Shown here piece after piece: positions 11,726 through 40,032 of a stretch of 42,763 bases of DNA. The notes beneath the pieces are model-generated. The model did not search any database. It was not told the origin of the DNA and was given only the letters and a program-made list of their open reading frames with translations. Source of the stretch: Octopus sinensis. Taxonomy: Eukaryota. The stretch covers positions 1 through 42,763 of the forward strand of contig NW_021832209.1 of assembly GCF_006345805.1 (NCBI RefSeq), written 5' to 3'. The position numbers and the translations under genes were made by a program. Position 1 is the stretch's first letter. Every line of letters starts with the position of its first letter.

Positions 11726-14700
11726 ATGCTTAAATTAGGGTGTGTGAATGCGCGTGCGTGGCTTGGCGTCGGCTTGGAAGCAAGGTTACCTTCTAAACGA
11801 CATCAAGTCACTGAACGTGGATATAGTAGCTATCAGTGAAACCAGACTCAGCAAGCCACGGGCCCTCGCGTCCATGTTTGGCAATCAATTTGACATTTAT
11901 TTTTCTCCCTGTCTGCCGAACATAGGTGGTGGTGGTACCACGGTGCTTTTTCGAAAGAGTCTAAACGTAAAAGTAATATCAATATTCCTAAACCCGGAGG
12001 GTAGGCTGGTTGTCTTGGACGTGGATGGCAGAAATGGGTGTACATTCCGTCTGATGGCAGTTTATGCACCGTCCTTAACGGGTTGGGCGGATTTTTTCAG
12101 ACCTCTAGAGGTTTTTCTGGGAACGTCTCGACCTTTACCGTTAGTAGGGGATTGGAACGCTACCTTGGACACGAATCTAGACTATGTGGGAATGGATAGT
12201 AAGAGAAGGGAATGTAAGTGCTTCAATGACCTGCTCAGACGTTTCCATTTGTCTGACAGGTTCTGACTCGACCATCCGAATGTGCCAACATGGACTTGGA
12301 CAAACTGCGTCGGATCGTCGAGATCGTATCTAGATAGAGTTCTATGTAGGACAGAGGATAGGGATAGTGTAGGATGTCCACAATTTAAAATAGTCAGCTA
12401 CACAGATCACAAATTTGTGACGTGTTTCCTCGACTTAGATAAGACACATAGGCAGGGTCCCGGTTACTGGAAACTGAACACGTCGCTGTTAGCGCGGCAG
12501 GTTTACAGGAACTGGATTAGCGAGTTAATTATGAGGGTGTTAACGGGAGCCATCGTTAACAACCGCTGGTGGTTTGCCCTGAAAATGGCAATCAAATCGG
12601 AATCAATTAGGTTTTGCAAGGAATTAGCGATATATCGAAATAGAATAGAGGGAGACCTGGTTAAGAAACTAGAAGAGGCACTTACCACTGGCAGCGCAAC
12701 CAACGTGCTGGCTGCGAGGATGGCCTTCGACCAACACCTCAACGCCAAGCACGAATGTTGCGTCGTCAGAGCTAAAGTGCGTGCCTTAAGGAACGAAGGG
12801 ATCGAAGCTGCGCGTGAGGCCCAGGTAGCGGAGGCGCAACGTGGCAACAGAGTCACATTCGGTCTCTAATAGATCAACAGGGATGCAATTTACTCGAACC
12901 CGAAAGTATGTGTGAGGCCTTTCAACAGCACTTTGCTCGACTGTTTGGTGCGAGTGGTGGGTCGGAACGCGGGATGGACTTCAGTGCCTACATGACCGGC
13001 CTGCCGCGGCTCTCAGCAAGAGAAGCAGAGTGTTGTGAGAGTCCCATCACAGCTGCCGACGTACGGGATGCGATGGCGGGTTGCGTTTGGATGGTCTACC
13101 CTACGAGCTGTATTGTCAATTGCCAGACTTGTTTGGCGACCTCTTGGCATCCGTCTACTGCAACTGGCAACAAAACGGGAGAATCTCCGGTTTCGTGAGC
13201 CGAGGTGCAGTGACGTTGCTGAAGAAAGACCCAAACAAGGGGAATTTTATAGATAATTTCAGGCCCATCACTCTGCTCAACGCAGATTTGAAAATTTTGG
13301 CCAAAGAGGTTGGCGCTTGTCATTGGTAAACTGGTCGACAGGGCGCAAACATGCGCCGTGCCGGGCAGAACCATACATGACAACCTCCATCTGATGCGAT
13401 ACATTGTGGACAGGTAGTTAAGGATCCTGGCATGGGTGGGGCGCTGATCAATTTGGATTAGTCTAAAGCTTTCGATAAGGTCGACCATCGGCCTAGCGGC
13501 CCTCCTCAGGGTGGCTGCCTTCGGTCCCGTCTTCCGCGGTTGGATCGCTGCCTTGTATAGCGGCATCCGATCGGTGATTCGGGTGAACGGTCACCTGTCG
13601 AAACCGTTTAACATCACTCGTTCGGTCCGTCAGGGATGTCCCCTGTCGGCGCTTCTGTATGTATTGACTCTCGAGCCGCTACTGCGGAAGCTGGCGACAC
13701 TGAAGGGCATCCCACGGGAACTGGGTTGCGGGATGAGCGTGTCGGCATATGCGGACGATATCACCGTCATAGTGTCGAGCGACAAACACATCCAGATGAT
13801 AGGCGAGACACTAAGAAAATACCAAACGGTGACGGGAGCGAAGATTAACCCGGAAAAGTCAGTGGGTTTGCTACTCGGCACCTGGAGAAGCAAGCCCATA
13901 CCGTCCAATTGCGACTCAGTAGTGGGACGCTGGGTGGACGGGCCGGTTAAATTGCTCGGGGTCTGGTTCAAATGGATAAGAACTGGGACGAGATCACGAG
14001 TAGAGTGGTCGCTCTCAGCCAAACATGGGCTGAGAGAAAGCTGTCTCTAAAAGGTCGGGCGGAGGTGGCTAATGCGTATATCGCATCAATCATCGATTAC
14101 CGCCTGACCGTCGTGCCTTTTTCCGATGCTACCATCTCGAAACTGGAATGCATATTCTTCCGCTTTCTGTGGAAGGGTGGCGTTCCGATGGTGAGGCGAT
14201 CCATTTGCTGTCAACATCCGCTAAATGGAGGACTGGGCATGCCGTGGTTAATGATGCGCAGGCATGCGCTGAGACTGCGGCATCTCTGGAACTTCATCGA
14301 TGACGGTGAACAGGTGTGGGCGCCGTTTGTGAGGCGCGCCTTCCCGCAGCTCGTCTCACTGACCGAACTGCAAACGTGGATCAAAAAGAGACCGAAACTG
14401 GGCGATTAGCATCGAGAGTGTCGCCAAGCTCTACAGCAGCTCTGCCGTCCGGGATCAAACTTGTGCAACTTACAAACGACCAAAGCGTTCTATAGAGGAC
14501 TAGTGGAGGGGAGGTCCGACGACACACTCGGGGCAAACCTGGGCGTCGATGAGAAATTCCTAACCCGCCTTTTCAGGACGACGTTCGGTCCGGGGCCTAT
14601 GGATAACTTTCAGAGATCCCTGGTTTGGCAATGCTATCGGGACGCACTACCTGTTCGAGAGAAGAGCTACAGACACGGTTTGAAAACCACAGGACCGACC

Positions 14701-15417: not shown

Positions 15418-15560
<143 letters not shown>

Positions 15561-16532
15561 TATGTACGTATTTATAATGTATATATGCTTATGTATATGT
15601 GTGTGTGTGTGCGTGTGTTTGCGCCTATTTATACCTTTATTTTGACATTCCACAAGGGAAGTTCTAAGATTATTTCGGATTTTGTCTCCAAAACATCTCT
15701 CTTTAGAATTCTTTTCGAGCAATCTCTTGTGACTTATCTCCCTTTGAAGCAGTATCTTTACCTCTCACATCGCTATTCTAAGTTAGAAATGTCAAAAAAA
15801 TATTAGTTATTTACTTTAGCTAAACTTTAAAAAAAGTCGTGGGTAATATCGTCATTTCAAACAACATTGCTTGATAGATAAACATTCTGTGCTAGAAATA
15901 GCAGTCAGTTAACATATTAAAAAATGCGTATAATGAAAGTTTCATTTCTATTTTCTAACATTACACAAAGTTTGCGACATATTTGACCAGAAAAGAAGCG
16001 ATGGAGAAAAATTCTCGCTTCAGTTCAAAGCGTCCCCTATGGGCTGGTAAATGGACTTCGAGCTTCATTGCGCTCTTCAGTATCAGATGCCAAGCGAGGT
16101 AACCTTAAATTGACTTGAAGACTTGGCAACCTTGTAAGAAATCATAAAAAACCATTTACTGATTGTGTATATTTCCAACATTAATTTCATTTACAAAGAC
16201 AGATCTCCGTTTTCTCTCTCTCTCTCCCTCCCTCCCTCCCTCTATCATTATCAGTTTGGTTTCCTCGAGCGACGCATTTACCCACTAGCTACTTCTTCAG
16301 TGACGTCTTCTAAAGGAGTTTCCGCAAATATTTTTCTACTTAATCCCCTTCTCCAACTTTCATTCCAACAGATTACCCTCCTCCAATATATAATCCAATC
16401 ATTATTAGGACGGCAACCATGACTACAGCAGCTGGGATTTTGTGTTTCTATGCTTAATGAGTTCCTTGGTCGAAAGGAAATCCAACCTCGACATTCACTG
16501 AATTTCTGGGACTGGTCACACACACACACATA

Positions 16533-16833
16533 TTAGGTTGGCAACTAAGTTCTCGCCGTTTTTTAAAATTTAAATTTTTTAAAAGGTTTAATAAAAAAAA
16601 ACAACTAATTAATCAATAATGTATTCACCCTTGTTGTTTACAACTTCTTCCCAACGTTCAACAAGATTTCCAAGCAAACCAGCGAAGATTATGGTTCGTT
16701 GATTTTTGTTGTTGTCACTTAAAGCATACGGAACCCATGCTCCATACTTCTGAACCTTACCCATCAAGTGAAGATGCTTCTCTATACCAGTGTTGGAGCA
16801 TTCCATTTTCTCTGCTAGTTCCCTTGTCGTTTG
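16533..16833 (-). mobile_element. Internally deleted mariner (Tc1/mariner) fragment with one TIR
   Basis: TA followed by ttaggttggcaactaag (mariner-type TIR) at 16531-16549; minus frame TTRELAEKMECSNTGIEKHLHLMGKVQKYGAWVPYAL (WVPHEL-like) fused directly to the C-terminus NLVERWEEVVNNKGEYIID; catalytic domain deleted; second TIR not seen. Confidence 0.85.
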
Positions 16834-16902
16834 ACGATAATTTGTGTGTGTGTATAATTATAATTTTCTTTCGGAAAACAGCGTAGAAGTATAACTAGAC
16901 AA

Positions 16903-17314
16903 GTATAACAGATAGAATAGAAGAGGTTCAAACCAGGCAGACTACGATTAACACACACGGGTTTAATTAGGATAAAATAAGAATTGTCCAATCTGAAATA
17001 TTTTGACATATGAATATATTTGAATATATTATGAATTTTTAAAAACGTCTTTTTTTCTATATTTCATTATTATTTTTTTTATCTATATTCTATTATTATT
17101 ATTATTATTATTATGTTCACATATTTATATATTTATATGTCCATGAATATTTATACTATTTCTATATTTTTAGTATTTCTATATTTTTATATTTCTAATA
17201 TATCAATATATATTTCAAATTAGACGATTATTATTTTATCCTAATTAAACCCGTATATGTATGTGTTAATCGTAGTCTGCCTGGTTTTAACCTCTTCTAT
17301 TGTATCTGTTATAC
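16903..17314. repeat. Imperfect inverted repeat of about 100 bp (arms 16903-17001 and 17210-17314) around an AT-rich spacer
   Basis: gtataacagata.aatagaagaggtt.aaaccaggcagactacgattaacac...cgggtttaattaggataaaataa occurs in both orientations. Confidence 0.88.
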
Positions 17315-17503
17315 GTATGTGTGTATATATATGTATATATATGTGCGTGTATAAGTGTATATATGTGTGTGTGTGTGGGTGTGTGTATGTATGTATGCGT
17401 ATGCATTTGTATATATGTGTGTACATGTTTGTATAAACACACGGACACATATGTATATGCACGCATATGTATAAGAAAATACATAAATATATACACACAC
17501 ACG

Positions 17504-17534
<31 letters not shown>

Positions 17535-17542
17535 TATAATAT

Positions 17543-17594
<52 letters not shown>

Positions 17595-17664
17595 ATATAT
17601 ATAAAACTTACTTGGAAGTGGATGCATGGCGTTCGATTATATAATAATATAAATAATATAAATA

Positions 17665-17782
<118 letters not shown>

Positions 17783-18332
17783 CTCTATCTATCTATCTCT
17801 CTATCTATCTATCTATCTATCTATCAACATACGCTCATGTAAATGAACAAACGTTCCTATAAGTATTTGTATACAATGAAATGTTAATCGTCCGTTCAAC
17901 ATCTAAACATCTCAAGTAACACTCTTCTACTCTGACAATTCTAACGGACATCAACCTACTTCCAACAAGGCTGTGCATGGAATAATTTGCATTTTTGCAA
18001 AAATTAATACAGCATTGCTTTTATTGCTTTTTTTATTCTGAGCATTTCCCATCATGCATTATTACATCCTCATATAATTAGATTTCCTTCCAGGGCGATT
18101 CCATCGTTTATGTCCCCTAACCCTTAAGAAACCTTACCTGTGACTAGTTGACAATTGTCATATTACACACACACGCCCCACCCCACATTTTATACACCCG
18201 GCAAATAATTGTGTATATATCTCTTCACCCAGCGTACCTATATTTTTCTGTGGAAAAAGACATAATTTTTTTACTGTTTTACATAATTTTTTACGATTCG
18301 TATTTTCGCATTTTACTATTACACAGTTTCAA

Positions 18333-18864: not shown

Positions 18865-19504
18865 GATGGCTGCCCCTCGTTATCGAGTATGGCCATTGCA
18901 CGAAGCTTAACTGTTATTGGTGCTGTGATCGAATGTGACTTTATTTGCTTTTTAAGGCTACAGCCAGCTATTCAGTTGAGACTCACAGCACCATCAACAA
19001 TCATGAACAATGTTGTTATCGTGCAATGCCTGTGCAGGAATATTTTTTTTTAAAGTGAGGAAAGGCTGTGCACTGCGTCAATCCCACTCACTGAGCAACA
19101 GCAGCCATAATCCGAAAAGAACAAGTCAACATCATAGGTAACCACTGAGCCGCAGGTTTTATGTCGGAGTTATCCCAGTTACCCGAGTTACCTTCTCCTA
19201 GAAGGCTGCTCTAACAAAGGCAAGGAGTCCTTCACTTCCAATAGTTTAACCGCGCGATCGGGTATTCAGTCCGATTATTTCTATGTCCCCGCACATGATA
19301 CAGCCTTAAGACATTTATTGGATGGCCGTTGACTCTCAAGAGTTCCTCCGCCCTTTGACGGGTTTTGTTTTTCATCCCGCAGGGTGTCCAATAAACACCC
19401 TCCTCACCAAGCAGGCTTGGGGGTTGCCAGTTTAGTCGCCGACGACCCGACCATGCAACAGGTTGCACTGGGTTACATGTTACCAGTAGCACTCGAAAAT
19501 GACC
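18865..19504 (-). mobile_element. Non-coding RTE-derived (bipartite-like) non-autonomous retroelement, 640 bp
   Basis: Minus strand carries an RTE-type 5' UTR motif (ccttgcctttgttagagcagccttctaggagaaggtaactc); no RT or endonuclease ORF; both ends flanked by (CATA)n-type repeats. The RTE assignment is from recalled motif similarity. Confidence 0.65.
19427..19504 (-). ncRNA. HDV-like self-cleaving ribozyme candidate at the 5' end of the RTE-derived element
   Basis: Minus strand: P1 GGTCAT/ATGGTC, P2 CCAGT/ACTGG, P3 GCA/TGC, L3 ACCTGT whose CC can pair with GG (P1.1), P4 TCG-tcgg-CGA, J4/2 CTAA; G1 at 19504 lies at the element boundary. Confidence 0.65.
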
Positions 19505-19506
19505 TG

Positions 19507-19650
19507 ACATACATAATACATACATACATACATACATACATACATACATACATACATTCATGCATTCATGCATGCATGCATACGTATATACATACATGCA
19601 CACAGACACACACATATATATATATGTATATGTATATGTATATGCATATG

Positions 19651-19709
<59 letters not shown>

Positions 19710-19739
19710 GTACATATATATACATATATATATATATAT

Positions 19740-19779
<40 letters not shown>

Positions 19780-19925
19780 TATATATATATGTATATGTAT
19801 GTACATATATATACATACATATGCATATGCATATACATATACATATATATATATATACATACACAGGATAAGTTCATATGTATTAAGTATGATTATATAA
19901 ATTAAACAGATATATATGCATACAT

Positions 19926-19970
<45 letters not shown>

Positions 19971-20284
19971 TGTGTTTGTGTGTATGAAGCTGCAGAGAGG
20001 AAAATGAAAAGAAAGAGATCGGAAAAGATTTCCAGAAATTTATTTCCGCACGTATTCCATTTTCTTCTCCATTGTGACGTCAGAGAATTGTATTCCGTTT
20101 TGTCATAGAAATATTGTTCGTATTCTCATTTTTGTGTGAAAATGTGTGAGGAGGCGCGCACGCGCACACACACACATATACGTTCGTGCGCGCCAAAGCA
20201 TACCCCTCACATAAGCCGGTGTATTCACATACATATAGAGTCAGTGACATTACAACATACATATATGCGTACATACATACATAC

Positions 20285-20316
<32 letters not shown>

Positions 20317-20420
20317 TATATATTATATATATATATATATATATAATATATATATATATATTATATATATATATATATAATATATTATATATATGTATAT
20401 ATATGTATTTGTGTATATAG

Positions 20421-20453
<33 letters not shown>

Positions 20454-20600
20454 CATATATATTTATACACACACACACACACACATATATACACACATAC
20501 AGACACATAAATATATTCAATATATTCATGATGTACAGACAACCATCTATCTGTCTATCTCTCAGTCTCTCTCTCTCTCTCTCTTTCTCTCTATTCTCAT
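19507..20600. repeat. Compound (CATA)n/(TA)n/(CA)n/(TC)n microsatellites
   Basis: Directly visible; unique sequence intervenes at about 19985-20260. Confidence 0.93.
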
Positions 20601-20940
20601 ATACGTATATATGTACGTATTTTCCCCGTATGTGTGTGTGAGTGTACGCGCGTGCGTGTGTGTTAGTTTGCGTATGTGTATGCCTGTGTGCGCGTGTGTG
20701 TGTTTATTGCTGGTCATTCCAGGGAAAAAAAAGAATTTCGTGACAAATCATTGAATCAGAAACTGTTGAGTTAAACTAGCACAAAACAAACAAAAACAAA
20801 AAAAAATGAACTGCAGGAAATAATGTCTAGAATTCTCCACTAAAGGGGGAGGAGGAAGAGGCGGAGAAATACAAAAGCAAAGAAACACGGAAATAAACGA
20901 ATTGAAAAAGAGACAAATATTTTGGGTGAGAAGAGACAGA

Positions 20941-21999
20941 ATGGAAATTTATGATTTAAGTAAGAACAACGGTTATACCGTTTATAGTTGTTTAGGCAAG
21001 GAGAAGGACTGTGGGAAGAATTCCGAAGATCCTTCAATCTTGATCGATCTTTGTCATGCCATTGATGCCAACGAATTCCAAATGTCGCCCAATATGAAAT
21101 TATCGAATCGTGAAAAGAACTTAATGTTTCTGTCGAGAGATGTCGCGGATGTTGATAAGATAATGGGTATGTGCATGGATGTGAAAGACTCGATTCGTAT
21201 CCAAATGAATTCTGAACCTCCAGGAGAATACCAACATGCATTTGATCGAGGCTTGAACTCGGCACCGAGGATAAGGGTTGAAATACCAAGAACCATCGAA
21301 CGTTTGAAGAAATATAACGTTGCGAATTTAAAAGGCAGAAATAATGAACGGAGATATTTTACCGAAGTTGTTGATCCGTTCAATAAACGAGAGGCGTTTA
21401 ACGAAAGGGGTTTTAATTACCCACAATGTCAAGTATTTGGTCACGGCCTATACGACTTTTATTATCACCATCTTTACCATAATCACTCTCATTGTTCTTG
21501 TCATAAACTCTCTAATCCGCATTGTCATTTTCACGAAGCTGGCGCTCATAAAGTGGGCCTTTCATCTTGCAAATCAAAAACGGTTGAAAAGCAAATAAAA
21601 GCCGGTGGAAAAGAAGGGGAGGTCGAAACCGGAAGTAGAAAGAAACATGACGACGATTGGCATCAGGAAAAATCTTCCTTAAGATGTCGCAAACATGGCT
21701 TGATGTCACAAACTAAAGCAAGGAATTCCGTCTTTTGTCAGTCACCAAACATGGAAGATGAAAACTCGACGAAGATACAAGAAAGCCGCAAACACCCATC
21801 GTCTTCAGAGAAATCCATTTCTTTTGAGAAAAACCAAACAGAATCAGAAAATAGAGCTGAGAAAATTCTTAACTTTATTAATTCTTGTCTTCCATTAATT
21901 GCAGCCAGACAAGAAGCTCTGGTCTTTATTGCGTTTTGCTTTGTCGCCATTTTACTGTTTTTGATGAGAGCCACATTATGGAACTGTAAACAGGCATAA
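20941..21999 (+). CDS. Uncharacterised 352-aa protein with His/Cys-rich segment and C-terminal transmembrane-like helix
   Basis: Uninterrupted non-repetitive frame open from 20824 (after TAA 20821-23) to TAA 21997-99; first ATG at 20941; HHLYHNHSHCSCHKLSNPHCHFH segment; hydrophobic ALVFIAFCFVAILLFLM near the C-terminus; AATAAA at 22171-22176. No TE motifs. Could be a large terminal exon starting upstream of the ATG. Confidence 0.7.
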   Translation: MEIYDLSKNNGYTVYSCLGKEKDCGKNSEDPSILIDLCHAIDANEFQMSPNMKLSNREKNLMFLSRDVADVDKIMGMCMDVKDSIRIQMNSEPPGEYQHAFDRGLNSAPRIRVEIPRTIERLKKYNVANLKGRNNERRYFTEVVDPFNKREAFNERGFNYPQCQVFGHGLYDFYYHHLYHNHSHCSCHKLSNPHCHFHEAGAHKVGLSSCKSKTVEKQIKAGGKEGEVETGSRKKHDDDWHQEKSSLRCRKHGLMSQTKARNSVFCQSPNMEDENSTKIQESRKHPSSSEKSISFEKNQTESENRAEKILNFINSCLPLIAARQEALVFIAFCFVAILLFLMRATLWNCKQA

Positions 22000-22210
22000 C
22001 TCACATAATGTATCCATACACATACACACACACACATACATACAAATATACAATACACGCACACATATATACATATATACATACACATACATGCACACCA
22101 TCATATGTCGAAGCAAAATATCCTTTCTTAACACATTCTGTTGTATGTACGAAATGGTTCTCGAGATAATAATAAATCATTATTAATATTATCATCTTCC
22201 AATCGAATTG

Positions 22211-22948
22211 CATTTTATTTTATCTCTGACCCAAGACCACGTATATATTAGATGGAAAGAAACTTCCTGAGAATGTGGGCGGTTGATGTCAGCACAATAT
22301 TTTGTGTCGCATAGATTGTTGGTTACCCAGGAATCTGGTAAAAAAATTGTCAGTACCTTTCTTTGTCATTCCCAGGGCACCTACAACTGCAAGGATGGTT
22401 TTGGTTTTTAATTGCCACATTCTAGATCTCTCAATCTCAAGGTCCTTATATTTTGACAATTTTCAAATTCTTTTGCTGAGATGTTTCTATCAGTAGGCAC
22501 TCTCATATTAATTAGTAGGCATGGTTTTTGTTTTAAATCTTTGATGATGATGTCTGGTCTGTTAACATTTATTTGCCTATCTGTATGTATTCCACAATCT
22601 CATAGGATGGTAACATTCTTTTCCTCCGTGACTGGCTCTGGATGGTGTTCATTTCGGTTCTTAGGGTGTAGAATACCATAGTGACAACATACGTTCCAGT
22701 GCAAGTATTGACCGATTTGACCATTCCTAGTTTTATATTCTGTCGGGGCAGGGACTGAGCAACCGACAACAACGTGGCCAACACTCTCAAGTTTGTCATT
22801 GCAGAGTCTACACTTTGTGTCATATTCGCTTGATAGTTCCGGGTGAGGAGAGTCTGGTTTTGTCCTGCTAGGAAGAATCCTTCTGTTTCGGCTTTCAAAG
22901 CAACACTTTGCAGCCACTGATGGGTTCTTCTTATATCTAGGTCAGCTT
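22211..22948 (-). mobile_element. R4/Dong-clade LINE 3' fragment A (CCHC + RLE)
   Basis: LKAETEGFFLAGQNQTLLTRNY; CRLCNDKLESVGHVVVGC; HPEPVTEEKNVTIL; RPDII; frameshifted. Confidence 0.85.
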
Positions 22949-23028
<80 letters not shown>

Positions 23029-23030
23029 TA

Positions 23031-23061
<31 letters not shown>

Positions 23062-23064
23062 GAA

Positions 23065-23274
23065 GAATTACATAATACATAACAAAAACACCAGGGCTTA
23101 CAAACAGATATAACATACAGAAAAGTGCACTACTGGGCACTGCACACATCCTACGAAAAACACTTTCAATACAGTAACCATCAGAGCATCACAACAAATC
23201 ACAGCACATACCCAAGGCACACAGAGCTGCGCTCAGTAGTGAAGTGAAAGCACGCTATAAAAATAAAACTAGTG
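23065..23274 (+). mobile_element. R4/Dong-clade LINE 3' terminus B (same family as 26347-30025)
   Basis: Encodes KTPGLTNRYNIQKSALLGTAHILRKTLSIQ*; 3' UTR ending aaaaataaaactagtg matches the 3' end of the long copy; (TAA)n on both sides. Confidence 0.85.
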
Positions 23275-23432
23275 AATAATAATAATAATAATAATAACAC
23301 CAACAACACCAACAACAAACAACAACAATACAACAACATCATAATAATGATAATAATAATAATATAATAATAATAATAATAATAATAAATAATAATAATA
23401 ATAATAATAATATAATGATAATAATAATAATA

Positions 23433-23984
23433 CACTCCTCTGGAACCTCACCATTCAAACTGACAGAAGATAGACTCGATAGGCCAGACATCATCATAGT
23501 AAAAGACTTCAGACTAAAACATGCCTCCTCATTGATATGACTCTCCCATCGATATAAACGTATCTGTCAGGACCTACCAAAAACTGAGCAAATATAAGAT
23601 CTTGAAATAGAAATCAGCAAAATGTGGAACCTGAAGACTAAAACAATACCCGTTGTCATAGGTGCCCTGGGATATAGCAAAAGGGGCTGATTGCTACCTA
23701 ACTCAGATACTAGGAAACCCCAAAATGGCAAAATTCAAAAGATAGTGCTCATGGGAACTGCTCATATCCTACGCAATATACTTCCGATGTAATCTCAAGT
23801 TTTAAAACAAACATAATTTTCGTATGATTTTTTAGGTATTCACTTGTACAACACTAAGTACAAAACCAAATATATGGCACCCTAGGTATAACACCAACAT
23901 GAACTTCCAACTTGTTGTCTCTTGAGGTCTCTGGGTGAGACTTGGAGCCAGCTTGTGCAAATGTAAAGCAAAAGTCAAACATAG
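23433..23984 (+). mobile_element. R4/Dong-clade LINE 3' fragment C (RLE + 3' UTR)
   Basis: RPDII, MWNLKTKTIPVVIGALG, IQKIVLMGTAHILR; 3' UTR gtctcttgaggtctctgggtgagact shared with 24833-25036; (TAA)n on both sides. Confidence 0.85.
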
Positions 23985-24184
23985 AATAATAATAATAATA
24001 AATAATAATAATAAAGATAATAAAAATAAAAATAAAAATAAAATAATAATAATAATAAAAATAAAAATATAATAATAAATCATATTAATTATAATAATAA
24101 TAATAATATATTATAATAATAATAATAATAATTCATAATAATATAATAATAATAATAATAATAATAAGATAAATCTAATATAAT

Positions 24185-24464
24185 TTCTTTTTATCACAGG
24201 TTTTGTTGGAAGTCCTCGAGTCTTGCATGTGTAGCGGGCTTGCTACCTGCAGCCTACGGTACCATGCTATCTGTTCTTTTCAGCTATTTTAAATATTTCC
24301 CTGATTATCTTGGCCGTGTCAAGGAGGCAAACATTTTGTAACAGTTCTACTCGGCACTTTATTCCAGTTTCCTTTATATTCCTCTTGATGCCTTCTGCTA
24401 CTGTTCCCAAGGAACCAACAATAATTGGTACTGTCTTCACCTTCTTCATTTTTGATAGCCGGGC
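24185..24464 (-). mobile_element. R4/Dong-clade LINE 3' fragment D
   Basis: ORF 24267-24449 MKKVKTVPIIVGSLGTV...ELLQNVCLLDTAKIIRE, the RLE C-terminus of a divergent subfamily. Confidence 0.8.
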
Positions 24465-24544
24465 TATTATTATTATTATTATTATTATTATTTTATTATT
24501 ATTATTATTTTATTATTATCATCATCTCATCATCATCATCATCA

Positions 24545-24577
<33 letters not shown>

Positions 24578-24832
24578 TATTATTATTATTATTATTACTA
24601 TTATTATTATTATTACTACTATTACTACTACTACTATTATTACTATTTTATTATTATTACTACTATTATTACTATTATTAGTATTACTACTATTATACTA
24701 CTACTTATTACATTATTATTATTATTACTACTATATTACTATTATTATTATTATTTTACTATTATTATTATTATTATACTACTACTATTATTATTATTAT
24801 TATTTTATATTATTATTATTATTATTATTATT

Positions 24833-25036
24833 CTATGTTTTGATTTTGCTTTTATTTTGTACAAGTTGGCTGCAAGTCTCACCCAGAGACCTCAAGAGAC
24901 AACAGGTTGGAAGTTCTTGTTGTTGTTATGCCTAGGGTGCCATATATTTGGTTGGGGGGGGGGGAGTTTGGTGTTGTACTAATGAATGTCTAAAAAAAAA
25001 TTTTTTTTCTTTTTTTTTCTTTTTAAAACCGGAAAC
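24833..25036 (-). mobile_element. R4/Dong-clade 3' UTR fragment E (family of C)
   Basis: Reverse complement of the 3' UTR of copy C; (TAA)n on both sides of the element strand. Confidence 0.8.
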
Positions 25037-25083
<47 letters not shown>

Positions 25084-25123
25084 TTATTGTTTATTATATT
25101 ATTATTATTATTATTATTATTAT

Positions 25124-25760
25124 CATTGTCATTTACTTTTATCTGCATGTTTTAGCAATCACCTGCCGGGGCACACCCCGCGCCCTAGGGCAAGTGAGGT
25201 TAAGAGTTGTTGAAATATAGCTGAAAGCTTGGGGAGGGGAAGTAGAGATATATCTCCATGTAATGCAAACACAAACATTTACATTGATAGGGTTTTTTCT
25301 AAGGATGTGGGCAGTACTTGTTAGCACAATCTTTGGATTTCTTGAGACATGGTTTCCAGGGATATTGTCTAGGTGTTTCTGACATCCCTTTTTTATCATA
25401 CCTAGGGCACCTACAATAACAGGAACAGTTTTGTTTTAAGATTCCACATCCTCTGTATTTCGATTTCCAGGTCCTTATTTATTACTAAGTTTGTCAATTC
25501 CTTGACAGATACATTTTTATCAGTGGGGACGCTTACCTCTATTAGTCTGCAGGTATTTTCTTCCCTGTCTTTAACAATTATGTCTGGTCGATTAGCCTTG
25601 ATCGTTCTGTCAGTGTTGACTGGAAAATCCCAGAGGATGGTGACATTTTTACCTTCAACAACTGGCTGAGGATGGTGTTCATACAAGTTAGCAGGAGTGC
25701 CTAATTTGTAGTGTTTACATATCTGCCAATGTATATACTGTCCTACCCTATCGTGGCGAT
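25124..25760 (-). mobile_element. R4/Dong-clade LINE 3' fragment F
   Basis: YEHHPQPVVEGKNVTILWDFPVNTDRTIKANRPDIIVKDREENTCRLIEVSVP...DLEIEIQRMWNLKT; LTSTAHILRK. Confidence 0.88.
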
Positions 25761-25770
25761 TTTATTATTA

Positions 25771-25862
<92 letters not shown>

Positions 25863-25899
25863 ATCATCATCATCATCATCATCATATTATTATTATTTT

Positions 25900-26265
25900 T
25901 TTTTTCTTTCAAATTTGCTTCCATTTCTTGCCGAGTGTCTTCCCGACTCCTAGGGCAAAGAAACTCATAGTATACATTGGTAGGCCATTAAACCAAACTC
26001 AATAGTTCGTTCATTTTTTTTTTAAGTTAAATTAAAATACATGAGCAGCAACAGTTCTCACATCGACAATGCTCTTCTCAATACGTGTGATGTACCAGTT
26101 AAGACAATCTTTTGCACTTCTTGCAGGGATGGTAAGCCAGGGTTCATTCTCATATAATTTTCGCTTCCCTTCTTGATCATTCCTAGTGCTCCTACGATCA
26201 CTGGTATTGTAACCGCCTTGAGATGCCACATTTTCTCAATTTCAATGAGTAGGTCTTTATATTTT
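25900..26265 (-). mobile_element. R4/Dong-clade LINE 3' fragment G
   Basis: Minus strand encodes KYKDLLIEIEKMWHLKAVTIPVIVGALGMIKKG, then degenerates; TAA arrays on both sides. Confidence 0.75.
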
Positions 26266-26349: not shown

Positions 26350-29300
26350 TAGTTTTATTTTTATAACGTGCTTTCACTTCACTGCCGAGCGCAGCTCTGT
26401 GTGCCTTAGGTATGTACTGTGATTTGTTGTGATGCTCTGATGGTTACTGTATTGAAGGTGTTCTGCGTAGGATGTGTGTAGTGCCTAGTAGTGCAATTGT
26501 CTGTATGTTATATGTGTTTGTAAGTCCTGGTGTTTTTGTTATATATTTGTCTGAATATTTTTTATCATACCTAATGCACCTACTATGATAGGAATTGTTT
26601 CTGTTTTTAGATTCCACATTCTAGTTACCTCTATTTCCAGGTCTTTGTATTTTGAAAGTTTCTCCATTTCTTTTAGAGAAACGTTGTCATCTGCTGGTAT
26701 TGATACATCAATTAGAAATCATTTTTTTCTTCATGATCTCTGACAACTATATCTGGTCTGTTGACCTTAATTTCTCTATTTCTGTGTGTATTGGCATATC
26801 CCAGAGTATGGTTGCTTTCTCGTTTTCTGTGACCTTTTCCGGTGTGTGCCTATACCATCTTTTTTCTGTTGTTATTCCATAATGTTGGCATAGCTTCCAA
26901 TGTATGTAGGTTCCAACTCTGTCATGTCTGTGAATATTTTCCTTCTTAGCCAGGACTGGGCAGCCAGAGATAATATGATTTATTGTTTCTTGTCCATCTC
27001 CACATATTCTGCAGTTACTTGTTATATTTATTTTCATTACATGTTTTTGGTAATTTCTGGTGGGGAGGCTTTGGTCTTGTGCTGCAATTAAGAATCCTCC
27101 TGTCTCTGCTTTGAGTCCTGAGCTTCTCAACCATTGTTGGGATTTTTCTTTGTCTATTTCTTTTGCATTTAGTTTAGTCCAGTACTTGCCATGAAGGGGC
27201 TTTTCTTGCTATCGTTTTATCATGGTCCGTTGCTGTTCTCGTTTTAGTTTTGATTTCATTTGCTTTATAGCTTTTGTTGTGTTTTCTTCTTCTTCTCCCT
27301 CCTCCTCCTCCTCCTCGTCTTCTTCTTCTTCTTCTTCTTCTTCTTCTTCTTCTTCTTCTTCTTCTTCTTCTTCTTCTTCTTCTTCTTCTTCTTCTTCATA
27401 TTTGTTAGGTGGTATGATTTCTTGTTTGTATTTGTCAGCTTCCTTAAATACTGAGAACAGTTTTTTGTTTTGCTCGTGTTTTGCAGCTATTTGTATAAGT
27501 TTTCCTTGCTTCTGAAGTAGATATTTTTGCAGTCCTATGGTGGTTATTTTATAGTAGTCTTCCAGCTTTATAACGCCTCTACCCCCTTCTATACGTTGTA
27601 TATATAGCCTTTCTATGTCAGATTTTGGGTGATGCATCCTAGATCCTGTCATTATTTTTCTTGTTTTCCTATCTATTTTGGTTAGTTCATTTAGCTTCCA
27701 GTTAAGGATATTGTAGCTGTAACTTATAACTGGGACGACTAAAGTGTTAATACATATTATCTTGTTTTTAGCATTGAGCTCTGTTTTTAGTATTGATCTA
27801 ACTCGTCTATAATATTTTTCTTTATTTTCTCTTTCATTTGTGTGTGTTGTGTCTTATCTAGTTCATGGATTCCTAAATATTTGTAAGTTTGGCTTTGGTC
27901 TCAATCACTTATTTCATTGGCTTTATCTAGTGTGATGTTGCTACTCTTAACTAGTTTTCCTCTTTTCAGGGTTACTTTGGCGCATTTTTCTAATCCAAAT
28001 TTCATATCTATTTCTTTGGTGAATCCACGAACTGTCTTTAGTAGTGTTTCCAGCTGTTTGTCATTTGTAGCGTATAGTTTTAGGTCATCCTAAAGGTGGC
28101 TGATCGTTTTGCCGTAACATTTATATCCGCATCCAGTTCTATGTAGCATATGAGATAGAGGTGACAGTGCCGAGCAGAAAAGGAGTGGAGAGAGCGTGTC
28201 TCCCTGGAATATTCCTCTTCTAATGGGGATGGCTTTGGTTTTCATGAGTCCCTCTTTTGTTTGGAACTGTAGCACTGTCTGCCATTTATTCATAGAGTGT
28301 CCTATGTATTTTATATTTGTTGGTGCTACTTTGTTAATGGCTAGTGTTTCGAGGATCCATGTGTGGGGGATGCTATCAAACGCATTTCTGTAGTCGATCC
28401 ATGCCATACTGAGGCCTTTCTTCTTTCTGTGGTTGTCTTCAGTTATGGCTTTATTGATCATTGGTTGTTTTCGTTCAGGTGCTTGTTAAATCTTTGCGAT
28501 ATTACTGCAGTAAATGCTTTGTACATTGTAGGGAGACAGGTTATAGGTCTGTAGTTTTCTGGTTTTGCTGTCTCATTGGATTTGGGAATTAAGATGGTTT
28601 TCCCCTTCGTGAGCCATTCAGGCATTGTCTCTGGCTCTGCCAGTATGTTGTTAAAGTTTTCAGCCAGCTTTTTGTGCATCCTTGGTAGATATTTCAGCCA
28701 GAAGTTGGGGATCTTGTCATGCCCAGGTGCCTTCCTGTTGCTTAGTCTTTGCAGTGCCTGGGTGACCTCTTCAGTTGTTATGGGGTCCAAAGTTGCTCAA
28801 ATGCTGAGTTTGTTGTTTTAATACTCCTTTTCTTGGTTGTTCTTCCTTTGACCATATTTCTTTCCAGAATTCTTCCACTTCTTCTGCCGTTGGTGCTGCC
28901 GTGATGTCTATTTTATTTTTGCACAGTTCTTGGTAGAACTTTTTGGGGTTGGAGTTGAACTGTTTGTTTTGTTCAAAGAAACGTTGGCGTTTCTCATACC
29001 GGCGGATCATTTAGCTTTGGCACGGATATCTTGCTTTAGCTTTTCTTTTATCTCAGGTAAATCTTTTTCTGTGGTGTTGTATTTGCGGAGTATTTTTGTT
29101 TTCTTTTTGTTGCTTAGTAGCGTTGATTTTCTACTGATTTCATTTAGAATCGACAGATCTTTTCTCATTTTTTAATTTTCTTTTGGATGTTATTTATCCA
29201 CAGGGTTTGTTTGGGTGGTGGTACTCCTGTTTGGATGGGTTTGTGGGAGTATCCAGCTTCTTTTGTGACTGCAGTGGCTTCTGCATATACTAAGTCATTT

Positions 29301-30023
29301 AGCTCAGTGATATCGCTATTTGTTTCAGTGGCTATTAGTTTTGTGACGGCTAGGTTTATGCTGTTTATAACTGATGTTGTTTTTTGTCCATTTTGATTTT
29401 TGGGAGGTATGGTCGGTGGTCTATTTTGAGATCTGTGTTTTTCAGTTCTTTGATTATTCTACTTTTTATGGTATCATAATCATTAGGCTCCCCTTCGTTG
29501 TTTCCAGGTTTTAGATTTGTGTCGCTTTTTTTCTCATTCGTATGTTTGTTTGTCGTGTTTTGGCTTGCTGCTTGTCGTGCATTATTATGCATCCTTACGG
29601 TCTGGTTTTGTTGTTTCTTGTTTACATTGTTTTTGTTGGGAATGTTACGTTTGTCTTCGTGTTTTACTATCTCAGTGTTCATATTATGTGGCATTGTTGT
29701 GTGGCTTCTATCTACATTTTCCTGATGTATTTTTTCTTTTAAATGTTCTATTTCTATTTCTGATATTTTTTTTTCGTTGAGAATATATCTTCGTACGTTA
29801 GCTAGTTTATTAGGGTTCATTGCTGTATCCAAATCTTTATTTATGTTATTTTTATTCCATATTTTATATGTATACATTATTGTGTTTTCGTTCTTTGGGT
29901 AGAGCACTGCTGTAAAGTAAGCCGTGTAGGATTGAAATGTATTCCGCACGTGTCCATTTATGTCTTTTTGGTTTTATTTGCAGGACATGAGGAACAACGT
30001 CCGGCCCATTATTTTGCCGGTCG

Positions 30024-37474: not shown

Positions 37475-39403
37475 TTAAAAATATTTTAGAGTCTTAATTC
37501 TTGCGTGAATACAAGAGAATCCCAATTCTATACGGTTATTCAATAAGTCACCATTTCTTCTATGCATTAGTATTTCAAATGTTTCCATGGAGCAAAGTTG
37601 GCAACCAACTCTGTTACTTTTATAAGGCATCGCTCTTCTAACTAATTCCCAATTAAGGTTATATTTAATATTATTGTTTTTGAGTTCCCAGATCTTACTT
37701 GAAAGTGTGGTGCTATCAGCTTTATGACGTAATTTGAAAGAAGAGAGATGGTTGCTAAGACGTTTCTTAAAATTTATAGTACACCCTAAATAAATAAATT
37801 TGTTATTCTCTGTAGTTATGGTACATTTATAGATTACGTTATTTAACCCGCATAGCCCAGGTGCCGGGCATTTTGATCTAATTCTACAGGTACACCTAGG
37901 GGGATCATTTTCCGATGTGGGATTACTCAAGGATAGATGTCTCATATTCCTGCTATTCAAATCATTATTACTATATTTTTCGCTATTATAGTTAATGCTG
38001 CTATCTAAAATAGTGTTATCGTTATTATAGTTAATGTTGTTATCTAAAGCAGTATTATCATTTATCGGTCTTTCTACACTATCATTTAATTTTATAGTCC
38101 TACCATAATTACTAACATTATTGGTATTGCTACTATTATTGCCAGTATTAGTTTCCAAATGTATACTGTTACTATAGATATCATTGTTGTCTTCATTCCC
38201 GGTATTTTTCCTATTGGTATTACTCCTATTATTAACATAATTGTTCCTATTTGTATTATTATTATTACTAGCTATTCCATAGCTATTGGTTATACCTATG
38301 TTATGATAGTTATTATTATTGTGGCTATTATTACTTTCGGTAATGTTACTACAATTGCCATTGGTATTCCTATTGGTATTATTTAAATTTTTCCTGGCTA
38401 GTTTAATGTTATTATCATTAATCTTAGCTATTAAAGTGGACATATTTGTGAGGGTTGAATAAGAAATTCTGACCGTTTTTTTAGAAATAATTTTATGATA
38501 TCTATGAGAGGTTGGGAAGTTCTTTTCCAGAATTATTTTGAATCTACTCTGAATATCCGATAGAATCGCACGGTTGAAAGGAACATTTAGCCACAGTATA
38601 TCCTTCTTATTAAATTTCCTTGAATTAGAATTGGGGTTAGTTGAATCATTCCTACTCTCACCAGAGTCGTTGTATTTATCAATGTTACTATTTGCATGCT
38701 TCTTTGTTTTATCTAAATTTATCCTATCCGAGTTACCTATGTTCTTATCTTTATTCTTATTTTCATTTAGATTTGTTGTCACCGTAAATCTACTTCTACT
38801 TTTATTTCTAGCGTGATCCCTATTGTTGTTTACGTGGCTATTGTTACATCTTTTATTAGGAATATGTAAGTTCTCTTTATCAATAAAGGTAATTTTTTGG
38901 TTGTATTCTGCCTTAGATAACGCCGCATTATAATGCTCCGAATGGGAGTTAAATATATCAAAATTGGATGATAATTTAGAGATTCTTAAGGAAATATTTC
39001 TATCAAAGTATTAATTATATTTGGGGGATGATTGGATAATTTATTTACGTAACTAGTGATTTCGCCTTCTTTCCTAAATGGGTAATGTAGCGTAGAGTTA
39101 AGGTCTAATGTAATATCTAGGAAATTGACTATTTTAGTGCCTGGTTCATAGGTTATGCTAAGGTTGAAATCTTTAAAGAACCTATTAATTTTCTTTCTAA
39201 TCCTTTCAATGCTCGATTTATTATTACTAGGGATAACAAACAAAGCATCATCCCTATATAGACCAACTTGTAATTCAGGGATCTCCTTTTTTATGCATTT
39301 TAATAGATATGCGCCTACTAAATTAGTCACCTCAGCCGAATCACTGGAACCCATGGGTGTATCGAAAGTATTAGGGGTGTCTGCTCTGGTCCATAATTTT
39401 CCC
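37475..39403 (-). pseudogene. PLE polyprotein: RT C-terminal half, Asn-rich linkers, GIY-YIG endonuclease; one frameshift near 39000
   Basis: FDTPMGSSDSAEVTNLVG, GLYRDDA, VNFLDITLDL, SNHPP; after a 1-nt shift the frame runs into ORF 37475-38782 with DILWLNVPFN, ISYS, CTCRIRSKCPAPGLC, VIY...YLG, CQLC..E, N.R.E...CIH. Confidence 0.9.
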
Positions 39404-40032
39404 TCGTACGAAACAATTGTACCGAAATATTGATCCATTTTTGTTGCTTTTTTCTTGTATATATATGTGTGTATGTGTGTGTGTGTGTGCGTGCGCTGCT
39501 CCGTTGCTGTTGACATGTGAATTCTGTGCGTGCGTTGTCCGAATGTCTACGTTTGCAGAGCTGCCGAATTCGTCTTGTTGGTGCCACAAAATACGTGCAT
39601 GGCGCAGAAGTGGCATGTCATCTGAATGGGACGTATACTTTCTCTTTCGCTCTTAATATCCTTTAACGCCATTGTAAAAGGAGTTTTACCAGAAATATCA
39701 CGGCCAATTGAATACTTCTAAGGTAACGATTTTAATATCTTTCTTATTTTTATTTATCATGTTTAATATTCAATGATTAAAACCAATGATAGGTCTAAGT
39801 TGTTATACTAATAGAAATTTATTTTCTCTCTTTATCTCTTTAGTTCTTATACCTTCGTGAAAGAATTTTTACACCCGAAATTTCAGGATCATTAATTCAG
39901 GATCCGAGGTAAAAATTGAATATCTTCGTTTTTGTCTACATTGATATTTTATTTTCTCACTGTATTGCTGTTGCCCGTTAACACTCCGTTTCCTTTTATA
40001 TATTCATAGCATTCCAACAAACTATCAGCTCT

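What the first reader, a model, noticed from the sequence alone, without database searches (positions are those of the whole stretch)
20824..21999. Long orphan-like ORF: His/Cys-rich, probably tail-anchored membrane protein
The only long non-repetitive, non-TE ORF (391 open codons; 352 aa from ATG 20941), intact amid decayed elements, which suggests selection. It has a Cys-containing N-terminal region, a possible metal-binding HHLYHNHSHCSCHKLSNPHCHFH stretch, a charged disordered linker, one hydrophobic helix 8 residues from the C-terminus and no obvious signal peptide. I recognise no family. Candidate acceptors lie upstream (cattccag 20721, gtctag 20830) and AATAAA downstream (22171).
Basis: partly seen in the sequence, partly recalled or inferred. 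Interest (0 to 1): 0.7.

Follow-up and report, generated by a model that had tools for sequence, protein, structure and literature searches.

The report
Octopus-only tail-anchored orphan protein gene
This is a real, single-exon octopus gene, already listed in databases as a "hypothetical protein", that has no relatives outside octopuses and most likely makes a fast-evolving protein held in an internal cell membrane by one helix at its very end.

Summary
Window 20824-21996 is a 391-codon open frame. The ATG at 20941 gives a 352-aa protein, with the stop at 21997-21999.

The window is Octopus sinensis contig VCDQ01004178.1. This exact protein is already in NCBI nr and UniRef. O. vulgaris has a near-identical "hypothetical predicted protein".

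Two protein searches (5.8 billion clusters, 1.84 billion representatives), Pfam and PDB sequences found no family. The only relative is one 344-aa orthologue (about 70-73% identity) from an unidentified species in raw sequencing runs. AlphaFold models were unusable (pLDDT 30-35), and Foldseek returned nothing.

The reading frame is under selection. All four CDS indels against the distant orthologue are in frame, whereas only one of five leader indels is a multiple of three. Neutral simulation keeps the frame open in only 0.25-0.4% of trials. Constraint on the amino-acid sequence is weak (omega 0.45-0.75; some intervals reach 1).

The one hydrophobic segment (aa 326-342, GRAVY 3.15) has a 10-residue tail of charge +2 and is conserved, and there is no signal peptide. 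This is a tail-anchored topology, most likely in the ER.

The His cluster persists (10 of 11), but not significantly above background. The Cys residues within it are mostly lost, so a Cys/His zinc finger is not supported.

It is an ordinary lineage-restricted gene of unknown function, of modest interest.

The parts
20941..21999 (+). Complete single-exon CDS (352 aa plus TAA stop) of the Octopus-restricted gene
   Evidence: Searches give the ORF. The exact product is present in NCBI, UniRef and nr. It is colinear with the orthologue contig L001, and all its indels are in frame. An intact 353-aa ORF is also present in O. vulgaris.
20780..20940 (+). Non-coding leader (5' UTR or promoter-proximal sequence), A-rich. 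The ATG context is cagAATGG.
   Evidence: It aligns with L001 at 84% identity but with indels of 4, 1, 5, 3 and 8 nt. O. vulgaris has an extra in-frame stop here. It is therefore not coding, even though it is open in O. sinensis from 20824.
20941..21585 (+). N-terminal region, aa 1-215, predicted to face the cytosol. It is the most constrained part by NG86 (omega 0.36), and no fold could be predicted.
   Evidence: Regional dN/dS is. AlphaFold2 gave pLDDT 30-35. It sits on the Uversky order/disorder boundary.
21442..21549 (+). Histidine cluster, aa 168-203 (11 His in 36 residues; GHGLYDFYYHH...HFHEAGAH)
   Evidence: 10 of 11 His are kept in the orthologue, but 2 of the 3 Cys in it are lost. The His retention is not significant against the 73% background.
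21586..21837 (+). Charged, polar linker, aa 216-299, probably disordered
   Evidence: It falls on the disordered side of the charge-hydropathy boundary, with 37% KRDE and 14% hydrophobic residues. pLDDT is below 50, and regional omega (NG86) is 0.69.
21838..21915 (+). Juxtamembrane helix, aa 300-325, continuous with the anchor
   Evidence: This is the only part of the AlphaFold2 model that forms a confident element: a helix spanning 300-351 with pLDDT 57-86.
21916..21966 (+). Transmembrane anchor ALVFIAFCFVAILLFLM, aa 326-342
   Evidence: It is the only hydrophobic segment. GRAVY is 3.15, and 16 of 17 residues are identical in the orthologue. The one polymorphism seen in the other species is a conservative M336V.
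21967..21996 (+). Short C-terminal tail RATLWNCKQA, net charge +2
   Evidence: From. The orthologue's tail, RTTLWSSR, also has net charge +2, and its stop lies two codons earlier.
22171..22176 (+). AATAAA, a candidate polyadenylation signal 172 nt after the stop
   Evidence: Seen in the sequence only. Its use was not tested.
38272..38386 (+). Equivalent of 'exon 2' in the O. vulgaris gene model, which replaces the tail anchor; doubtful
   Evidence: The model CAI9738077.1 splices from a weak GTTTTG donor (window 21933) across 16.9 kb into this stretch. The stretch lies antisense inside the Penelope-like ORF at 37478-39010 (-).

Best explanation
This is a genuine single-copy, intronless protein-coding gene found so far only in octopuses. 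It is present in O. sinensis (this window), in O. vulgaris, and in one more distant species that I could not identify.

Its product is a 352-aa tail-anchored membrane protein. About 325 residues would face the cytosol: a weakly constrained N-terminal region containing a His/Tyr-rich cluster, then a disordered charged linker, then a juxtamembrane helix. A very hydrophobic 17-residue C-terminal helix with a short +2 tail would be inserted after translation.

The most likely destination is the ER membrane by the GET/TRC40 route. The mitochondrial outer membrane is the main alternative.

**Shown here:**
- the ORF and its coordinates;
- its restriction to octopus sequences in the databases searched;
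- selection for an intact frame;
- conservation of the anchor;
- the absence of any recognisable domain.

**Inferred, not shown:**
- membrane insertion and orientation, which follow only from the general rules for tail-anchored proteins;
- ER targeting, from high TMD hydrophobicity with modest tail charge;
- the idea that the cytosolic part acts as a flexible scaffold whose His cluster binds a divalent metal or a partner.

The last point is the weakest step.
For: **Origin and existing annotation**
- The window is GCA_006345805.1 contig VCDQ01004178.1. That assembly is O. sinensis according to 10.1101/2023.05.16.540928.
- The exact protein is already in NCBI nr and UniRef. Its cluster mate is O. 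vulgaris CAI9738077.1, a 'hypothetical predicted protein'.

**Coding status**
- Against the 81%-identical orthologue contig, the four CDS indels are 12, 3, 30 and 3 nt. The five leader indels are 4, 1, 5, 3 and 8 nt.
- O. vulgaris adds one more 3-nt in-frame indel and keeps a full 353-aa ORF.
- Placing the 149 observed substitutions at random leaves the frame open in only 0.25% or 0.39% of trials.
- The 391 open codons exceed every shuffle of the window (maximum 268).
- Omega is below 1 by all four estimators: 0.45, 0.63, 0.71 and 0.75.

**Single copy**
- There is one protein per species in 5.8 billion clusters.
- No paralogue appears in the window or in 38 kb of O. vulgaris sequence.

**Topology**
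- There is one hydrophobic segment, 10 residues from the C-terminus.
- The N-terminus is not hydrophobic.
- TMD GRAVY is 3.15 and 3.14, and the tail charge is +2 in both species.
- AlphaFold2's only confident element is helix 300-351.

**ER inference**
- A highly hydrophobic TMD with low tail charge favours the ER through GET3/TRC40 (PMC5450235).
Against: - **Weak amino-acid constraint.** Methods that account for transition bias give omega of about 0.72-0.74, with bootstrap intervals that reach 1 (0.53-1.05 and 0.45-1.14). The observed 91 amino-acid-changing codons are not significantly fewer than the 95.9 +/- 5.0 expected from random placement (P = 0.19).
- **CDS no better conserved than its leader.** Ungapped identity is 85% in the CDS and 84% in the leader.
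- **No expression evidence.** None could be obtained. I could not tell whether the Logan runs that hold the orthologue are RNA or DNA.
- **A conflicting gene model.** The O. vulgaris model replaces the anchor with another exon.
- **Mammalian targeting rules.** A +2 tail is also compatible with mitochondrial targeting, and the rules used come from mammalian cells.
- **His cluster not significant.** Its conservation does not exceed background (P = 0.13).
- **No structural support.** No structure could be predicted.
Confidence: 0.7

Rival explanations
1. The gene is real, but the mature product is the spliced form in the O. vulgaris annotation. The transcript would leave the ORF inside the anchor (donor at window 21933) and end in an exon 16.9 kb downstream. 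That gives a different hydrophobic C-terminus, so the conserved helix would not be the functional anchor.
For: The annotated model CAI9738077.1 (369 aa) has canonical GT...AG boundaries. That annotation pipeline used Iso-Seq and RNA-seq evidence.
Against: - The donor, GTTTTG, is weak.
- Exon 2 is ATT-rich, low-complexity sequence lying antisense inside a Penelope-like element.
- The unspliced ORF, with the same anchor and stop, is intact in O. vulgaris.
- The anchor is 16/17 identical in the distant orthologue, and its stop lies two codons earlier.
- The exact unspliced 352-aa product is what is on record for O. sinensis.
Confidence: 0.1
2. The ORF has no protein function. It would be a chance or decaying ORF, or part of a non-coding RNA, kept open by luck and picked up by gene predictors.
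For: - Substitutions are close to neutral in pattern (P = 0.19).
- Omega intervals reach 1.
- The CDS is no more conserved than its leader.
- There is no domain, no predictable fold and no expression data.
- The gene sits in a gene-poor, TE- and microsatellite-rich region.
Against: - The frame survives about 15% nucleotide divergence, with P = 0.0025-0.004 under neutrality.
- 5 of 5 coding indels are in frame, against 1 of 5 in the leader.
- No fragmentary or disrupted copies were found among about 15 billion proteins.
- Conservation is uneven along the protein (block variance P = 0.027).
- The ATG, its context and the anchor are conserved.
Confidence: 0.1
3. It is not a true orphan. It would be a very diverged member of a known tail-anchored or other family, whose similarity has eroded beyond detection by sequence.
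For: - The protein evolves fast: 27% amino-acid divergence at dS of about 0.2-0.3.
- At that rate, homology to squid or other molluscs would fade quickly.
- The large disordered portion makes sequence searches insensitive.
Against: - The phmmer search of 1.84 billion representatives found nothing.
- Profile search, Pfam at E <= 10 and the PDB profile search also found nothing.
- The structural route failed for lack of a usable model, so it could neither confirm nor exclude this.
Confidence: 0.15
4. It is a transposable-element or virus-derived ORF, belonging to one of the surrounding decayed elements.
For: It is intronless and embedded among LINE and Penelope-like fragments.
Against: - There is no TE or viral domain.
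- There is one copy per species and no related fragments in the window or the O. vulgaris locus.
- No terminal repeats bracket it; the repeats found nearby are microsatellite families.
- The same microsatellite-bounded locus is found in the distant species.
Confidence: 0.03

Closest known systems
Tail-anchored (TA) membrane proteins of the ER and the mitochondrial outer membrane. This is a topological class; examples recalled from memory are cytochrome b5, Sec61-beta and mitochondrial fission factor.
   Same: It has a single C-terminal TMD and a very short tail. It has no signal peptide, and the bulk of the protein precedes the anchor. The TMD hydrophobicity and tail-charge values fall in the range that PMC5450235 associates with ER targeting, or less likely mitochondrial targeting.
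   Different: There is no sequence or profile similarity to any TA family. TA proteins form a class defined by topology, not a homologous family. Insertion and localisation are untested.
Taxonomically restricted ('orphan') genes of coleoid cephalopods. From my own knowledge, such genes are common in octopus genomes. About 46% of O. vulgaris proteins received no functional label.
   Same: It is restricted to octopus sequences, has no domains and evolves fast. It is short and simple in structure, lies in a repeat-rich region, and is annotated only as hypothetical.
   Different: Nothing sets it apart from that class except its clear tail-anchor topology and its His cluster.
De novo membrane proteins arising from thymine-rich non-coding DNA (concept recalled from the yeast literature; not checked here)
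   Same: The anchor is encoded by a T-rich stretch. The gene is intronless, shows weak amino-acid constraint and has no homologues.
   Different: De novo origin is untested, because no outgroup locus could be examined. The gene predates a split with dS of about 0.2-0.3 and spans 352 codons, which is long for a recent de novo gene.
Cys/His zinc-binding modules and His-rich cephalopod structural proteins (reflectins, beak and sucker-ring proteins; recalled from memory)
   Same: There is a local His density of 11 in 36 residues, together with Tyr and Cys.
   Different: There is no Pfam zinc-finger or reflectin match. The Cys positions in the stretch are not conserved. The overall composition is K/E/N/S-rich. 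The His cluster would be cytosolic rather than secreted.

Membership tests
Tail-anchored membrane protein (topological class) | Exactly one transmembrane segment | tested here: met
   Only one run of 19-residue Kyte-Doolittle windows exceeds 1.6, at aa 316-349 in the window protein and 309-343 in the orthologue. No dedicated TM predictor was available.
Tail-anchored membrane protein (topological class) | The TMD lies at the extreme C-terminus, with a tail too short to emerge from the ribosome before termination | tested here: met
   The TMD is aa 326-342. The tail is 10 residues here and 8 in the orthologue.
Tail-anchored membrane protein (topological class) | No N-terminal signal peptide or signal anchor | tested here: met
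   The N-terminus, MEIYDLSKNNGYTVYSCLGKEKDC, is polar. No long hydrophobic window occurs before aa 316. This rests on hydropathy only; no SignalP-type tool was available.
Tail-anchored membrane protein (topological class) | Post-translational insertion with the N-terminus in the cytosol (GET/TRC40 or equivalent) | not testable with these tools
   This needs cell-biological assays. ER targeting is inferred from GRAVY 3.15 and tail charge +2 using PMC5450235.
Taxonomically restricted (orphan) gene | No detectable homologue outside the lineage | tested here: met
   Only octopus sequences were found by phmmer against 1.84 billion representatives and by word-indexed single-sequence and profile searches of 5.8 billion clusters. 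Pfam and PDB gave nothing. How well these collections cover cephalopod genomes is unknown.
Taxonomically restricted (orphan) gene | The reading frame is maintained by selection in more than one species | tested here: met
   All coding indels are in frame. P(no stop) is 0.0025-0.004. Constraint at the amino-acid level is only weak.
Taxonomically restricted (orphan) gene | Transcribed and translated | not testable with these tools
   No read-level expression data were accessible. Gene models exist in two species.
De novo originated gene | The orthologous outgroup locus is non-coding | not testable with these tools
Transposable-element protein | Multi-copy, carrying TE domains or bounded by terminal repeats | tested here: not met
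   There is one copy per species and no TE domain. No paralogue fragments were found, and no bracketing repeats other than microsatellite families.
Cys/His zinc-finger-type metal site | Conserved Cys/His ligands with the spacing of a known family | tested here: not met
   There is no Pfam hit at E <= 10. C187R and C195S occur in the orthologue. Only 8 of 14 Cys are conserved, and the 15 of 17 conserved His are not above background (P = 0.13).

The most novel reading that the evidence does not exclude
The gene arose de novo, or was remodelled beyond recognition, within the octopod lineage from A/T-rich non-coding DNA. Its T-rich 3' end would supply a ready-made membrane anchor. It would now be kept as a cytosol-facing, largely disordered, His-rich ER or mitochondrial surface protein with an octopus-specific role.
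Probability: 0.2. Interest if true: 0.5.

Novelty: new member of a known kind. Interest (0 to 1): 0.3.

Why it matters
This is a clean example of a lineage-restricted animal gene. Selection clearly preserves the open frame and the membrane anchor, yet it barely constrains the rest of the sequence. That pattern is relevant to how new membrane proteins are born and kept.

For cephalopod biology, it adds one testable candidate for an octopus-specific organelle-surface protein. It is one of many unlabelled octopus genes and is already annotated as hypothetical, so its value is modest until its expression or localisation is known.

The work also flags a probably wrong C-terminal exon in the O. vulgaris gene model.

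Tried and rejected
**Searches that found nothing**
- Pfam on the protein and on its orthologue found nothing credible. The single hit, Presenilin at E = 0.044 for one member, is hydrophobic-helix noise.
- PDB sequence and profile searches found nothing.
- The profile search with the two-sequence alignment added no new relatives.

**Structure**
- AlphaFold2 was run on the two-sequence alignment and on the N-terminal 215 aa alone. Both models were unusable, at pLDDT 34.8 and 30.0.
- Foldseek against PDB was run only to close the loop. It gave 0 hits at E <= 0.001; the best had E of about 1 and TM 0.07. I discard these.

**Species and library type of the orthologue runs**
- I tried to identify the species and library type of the runs holding the orthologue (SRR11869384, SRR11869391, SRR11869394) by searching papers. 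There were no relevant hits.

**Readings I dropped**
- The NG86 omega of 0.45, with its tight bootstrap, at first looked like solid purifying selection. I rejected it as the headline figure, because NG86 ignores the 97:52 transition bias. LWL85, YN00, ML and a random-placement test give a much weaker signal.
- I considered the 'conserved His cluster' as evidence of a metal site and dropped it as not significant.

**Uninformative runs**
- The bacterial promoter/terminator scan is irrelevant to a eukaryotic gene.
- The Rfam scan of the window found nothing.
Full report
**Observation.**
- An open frame runs from 20824, directly after TAA 20821-20823, to 21996. That is 391 codons.
- The first ATG is at 20941, in the context cagAATGG. 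It gives a 352-aa product that ends at TAA 21997-21999.
- In 200 shuffles that keep local composition, the longest open frame averaged 159 codons and never passed 268. The length is therefore not a chance effect.
- Only one frame in the window is longer: 511 codons at 37478-39010 (-). It carries GIY-YIG similarity, lies next to a reverse-transcriptase fragment, and so looks like a Penelope-like retroelement.
- The other frames of 200 codons or more are LINE pieces (endonuclease at 11748-12263, RT at 13511-14047), microsatellite translations, or low-complexity frames that match no Pfam family.

**Where the window comes from.**
- An exact-sequence look-up places the protein on NCBI assembly GCA_006345805.1, contig VCDQ01004178.1, whose length equals that of the window. 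The O. vulgaris genome paper names that assembly as Octopus sinensis (10.1101/2023.05.16.540928).
- The exact 352-aa sequence is already held in NCBI nr and UniRef.
- Its 90% cluster also contains O. vulgaris CAI9738077.1 / A0AA36BQY1, a 369-aa 'Hypothetical predicted protein'.
- So the gene is already annotated, but only as a hypothetical protein.

**Relatives.**
- The word-indexed search of 5.8 billion protein clusters returned one homologue besides the query itself. The phmmer search of 1.84 billion representatives and a profile search with the two sequences added nothing further.
- That homologue is P0002: 344 aa, 70% identity by BLASTP and 73% in the HMMER and MAFFT alignments.
- It is assembled on contigs of about 1.27 kb from sequencing runs SRR11869391 and SRR11869394. 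A one-residue allele, M336V, occurs in SRR11869384.
- I could not identify the species or the library type of those runs.
- Pfam at E <= 10 and PDB sequences gave nothing credible for either protein.

**Structure prediction.**
- AlphaFold2 on the two-sequence alignment gave a mean pLDDT of 34.8.
- Only helix 300-351 rose above 50.
- The N-terminal 215 residues alone gave pLDDT 30.
- Foldseek against PDB returned no hit at E <= 0.001; the best had E of about 1 and TM 0.07.
- The structural route is therefore uninformative.

**Is it a gene? Frame integrity.** The orthologue contig is colinear with window 20780-22043 at 81% nucleotide identity, running from the A-rich leader to the CA/TA microsatellite after the stop. 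Three points bear on coding.
- *Indels.* Within the CDS the four indels are 12, 3, 30 and 3 nt. In the 160-nt leader the five indels are 4, 1, 5, 3 and 8 nt. O. vulgaris differs from O. sinensis in the CDS by four substitutions and one 3-nt insertion, and it keeps a complete 353-aa ORF with the same C-terminus and stop.
- *Stops.* Placing the 149 observed substitutions at random, with the observed spectrum, yields about 5 stop codons on average. The frame stays open in only 0.25% of trials in one direction and 0.39% in the other.
- *No broken copies.* No truncated or fragmentary copies appeared in the protein searches.

Together these are strong evidence that an intact frame is selected.

**Is it a gene? 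Amino-acid constraint.** This is much weaker than I first thought.
- NG86 gives omega 0.45 with a bootstrap interval of 0.31-0.67. NG86 ignores the 97:52 transition bias.
- ML gives 0.63, YN00 0.71 and LWL85 0.75.
- The bootstrap interval is 0.53-1.05 for LWL85 and 0.45-1.14 for YN00.
- Random placement predicts 95.9 +/- 5.0 amino-acid-changing codons, against 91 observed (P = 0.19).
- The CDS (85%) is no better conserved than the leader (84%) at aligned sites.
- Conservation is modestly uneven along the protein (block variance P = 0.027).
- The best-kept blocks are aa 161-180 and 321-340, at 90% identity each.

**Gene structure.**
- The 39 open codons before the ATG are not coding. O. vulgaris has an in-frame stop there, and the leader indels in the distant orthologue break the frame.
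- The candidate acceptors at 20721 and 20830 therefore cannot bring in upstream coding sequence.
- Whether they serve a 5'-UTR intron cannot be told.
- The CDS is a single exon.

**The conflicting O. vulgaris model.**
- It leaves the ORF at a weak GTTTTG donor inside the anchor (window 21933).
- It then joins an exon 16.9 kb away, equivalent to window 38272-38386.
- That exon is ATT-rich sequence lying antisense inside the Penelope-like ORF.
- The unspliced anchor and stop are conserved in all three species, so I regard that exon as a probable annotation artefact or a minor isoform.

**Anatomy of the protein.**
- aa 1-215: mixed composition, on the order/disorder boundary, NG86 omega 0.36.
- aa 168-203: 11 His in 36 residues, with Tyr and Cys.
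- aa 216-299: charged and polar, on the disordered side of the charge-hydropathy plot.
- aa 300-325: helix continuous with the anchor.
- aa 326-342: ALVFIAFCFVAILLFLM, GRAVY 3.15, with 16 of 17 residues identical in the orthologue.
- aa 343-352: tail RATLWNCKQA with charge +2. The orthologue has RTTLWSSR, also +2.

The protein has no hydrophobic N-terminus. It therefore meets the sequence-level definition of a tail-anchored protein.

**His and Cys.**
- In the orthologue, His is kept at 15 of 17 positions, and at 10 of 11 in the cluster. With 73% background identity this is not significant (P = 0.13).
- Cys is kept at only 8 of 14 positions. Two of the three Cys in the proposed metal site are replaced.
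- A Cys/His zinc finger is not supported.
- A His-based metal or pH-sensitive site remains possible but unproven.

**Likely mechanism.**
- The protein is made on free ribosomes.
- Its C-terminal helix is then captured and inserted after translation, leaving about 325 residues in the cytosol.
- In mammalian cells, a highly hydrophobic TMD with low tail charge goes to the ER through GET3/TRC40. More tail charge or less hydrophobicity shifts proteins to mitochondria or peroxisomes (PMC5450235).
- GRAVY 3.15 with a +2 tail therefore points to the ER first and to the mitochondrial outer membrane second.
- The pattern of evolution fits a flexible, largely disordered scaffold better than an enzyme. 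The frame and anchor are kept, the rest drifts, and a few better-conserved islands remain.
- All of this beyond topology is inference.

**Comparison and novelty.**
- The protein works like a tail-anchored protein but belongs to no known homologous family.
- It is one more member of the large class of cephalopod lineage-restricted genes of unknown function. Only 53.5% of O. vulgaris proteins could be given a functional label.
- It is not TE-derived. It has no TE domain, one copy per species, no bracketing repeats, and no paralogue fragments in 42.8 kb of O. sinensis or 38 kb of O. vulgaris sequence.
- De novo origin and divergence beyond recognition cannot be separated without outgroup genomes.

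**Verdict.**
- Four corrections apply: the gene is already annotated, the leader is non-coding, the Cys residues are not conserved, and amino-acid constraint is weak.
- Interest is modest at 0.3.
- Nothing here called for a referred step.

Noticed in passing
window 11748-14050 (+), with ORFs at 9805-11269 upstream: A decayed LINE. It has an Exo_endo_phos endonuclease (E = 6.6e-09) and an RVT_1 reverse transcriptase (E = 4.7e-16), split over several frames. It coincides with the only GC-rich stretch of the window (49-54% GC at 12-15 kb). The 292-314-codon frame upstream may be its ORF1, but it matches no family.
   Followed up: partly
window 37478-39516 (-), and a second fragment at 34533-35036 (-): A Penelope-like retroelement with an RVT_1 fragment and a GIY-YIG-like C-terminus. 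Both matches fall below Pfam's cut-offs. It contains the longest open frame of the window (511 codons), much of it Asn-rich low complexity. A second GIY-YIG-like fragment lies 2.5 kb away.
   Followed up: partly
window 38272-38386 (+); L004 27887-28001: The last exon of the O. vulgaris gene model for this protein lies antisense inside the Penelope-like element. It is reached by a 16.9-kb intron from a weak donor inside the tail anchor. This is probably a mis-annotation.
   Followed up: yes
window 17300-17900, 19230-20700, 22010-22100: Dense compound microsatellites of the (TA)n, (CA)n and (CATA)n types bracket the gene on both sides. The same repeat types bound the orthologue contig in the other species, which is probably why those contigs end there.
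   Followed up: partly
window 22930-25930: Long (ATT)n/(AAT)n tracts are arranged as inverted repeats, for example 23864-24077 against 24740-24953 (214 nt, 83% complementary). They may be remnants of a repeat-rich element. I did not examine them further.
   Followed up: no
window 15500-17730 versus L004 5700-6950: O. sinensis and O. vulgaris align at 90-99% identity across nearly the whole window. This stretch has no megablast match and differs in length (about 2.2 kb against 1.25 kb), which suggests a species-specific insertion, deletion or repeat expansion.
   Followed up: no
L001 / L005 position 1190 (codon 336 of the orthologue): A single A/G polymorphism separates the sequencing runs of the unidentified species. 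It gives M336V inside the transmembrane helix, which is a conservative change.
   Followed up: yes
window 27212-27853 (-) and 29368-29973 (-): Two further open frames of 214 and 202 codons. They show only sub-threshold, low-complexity Pfam matches, and their nature is unknown.
   Followed up: partly
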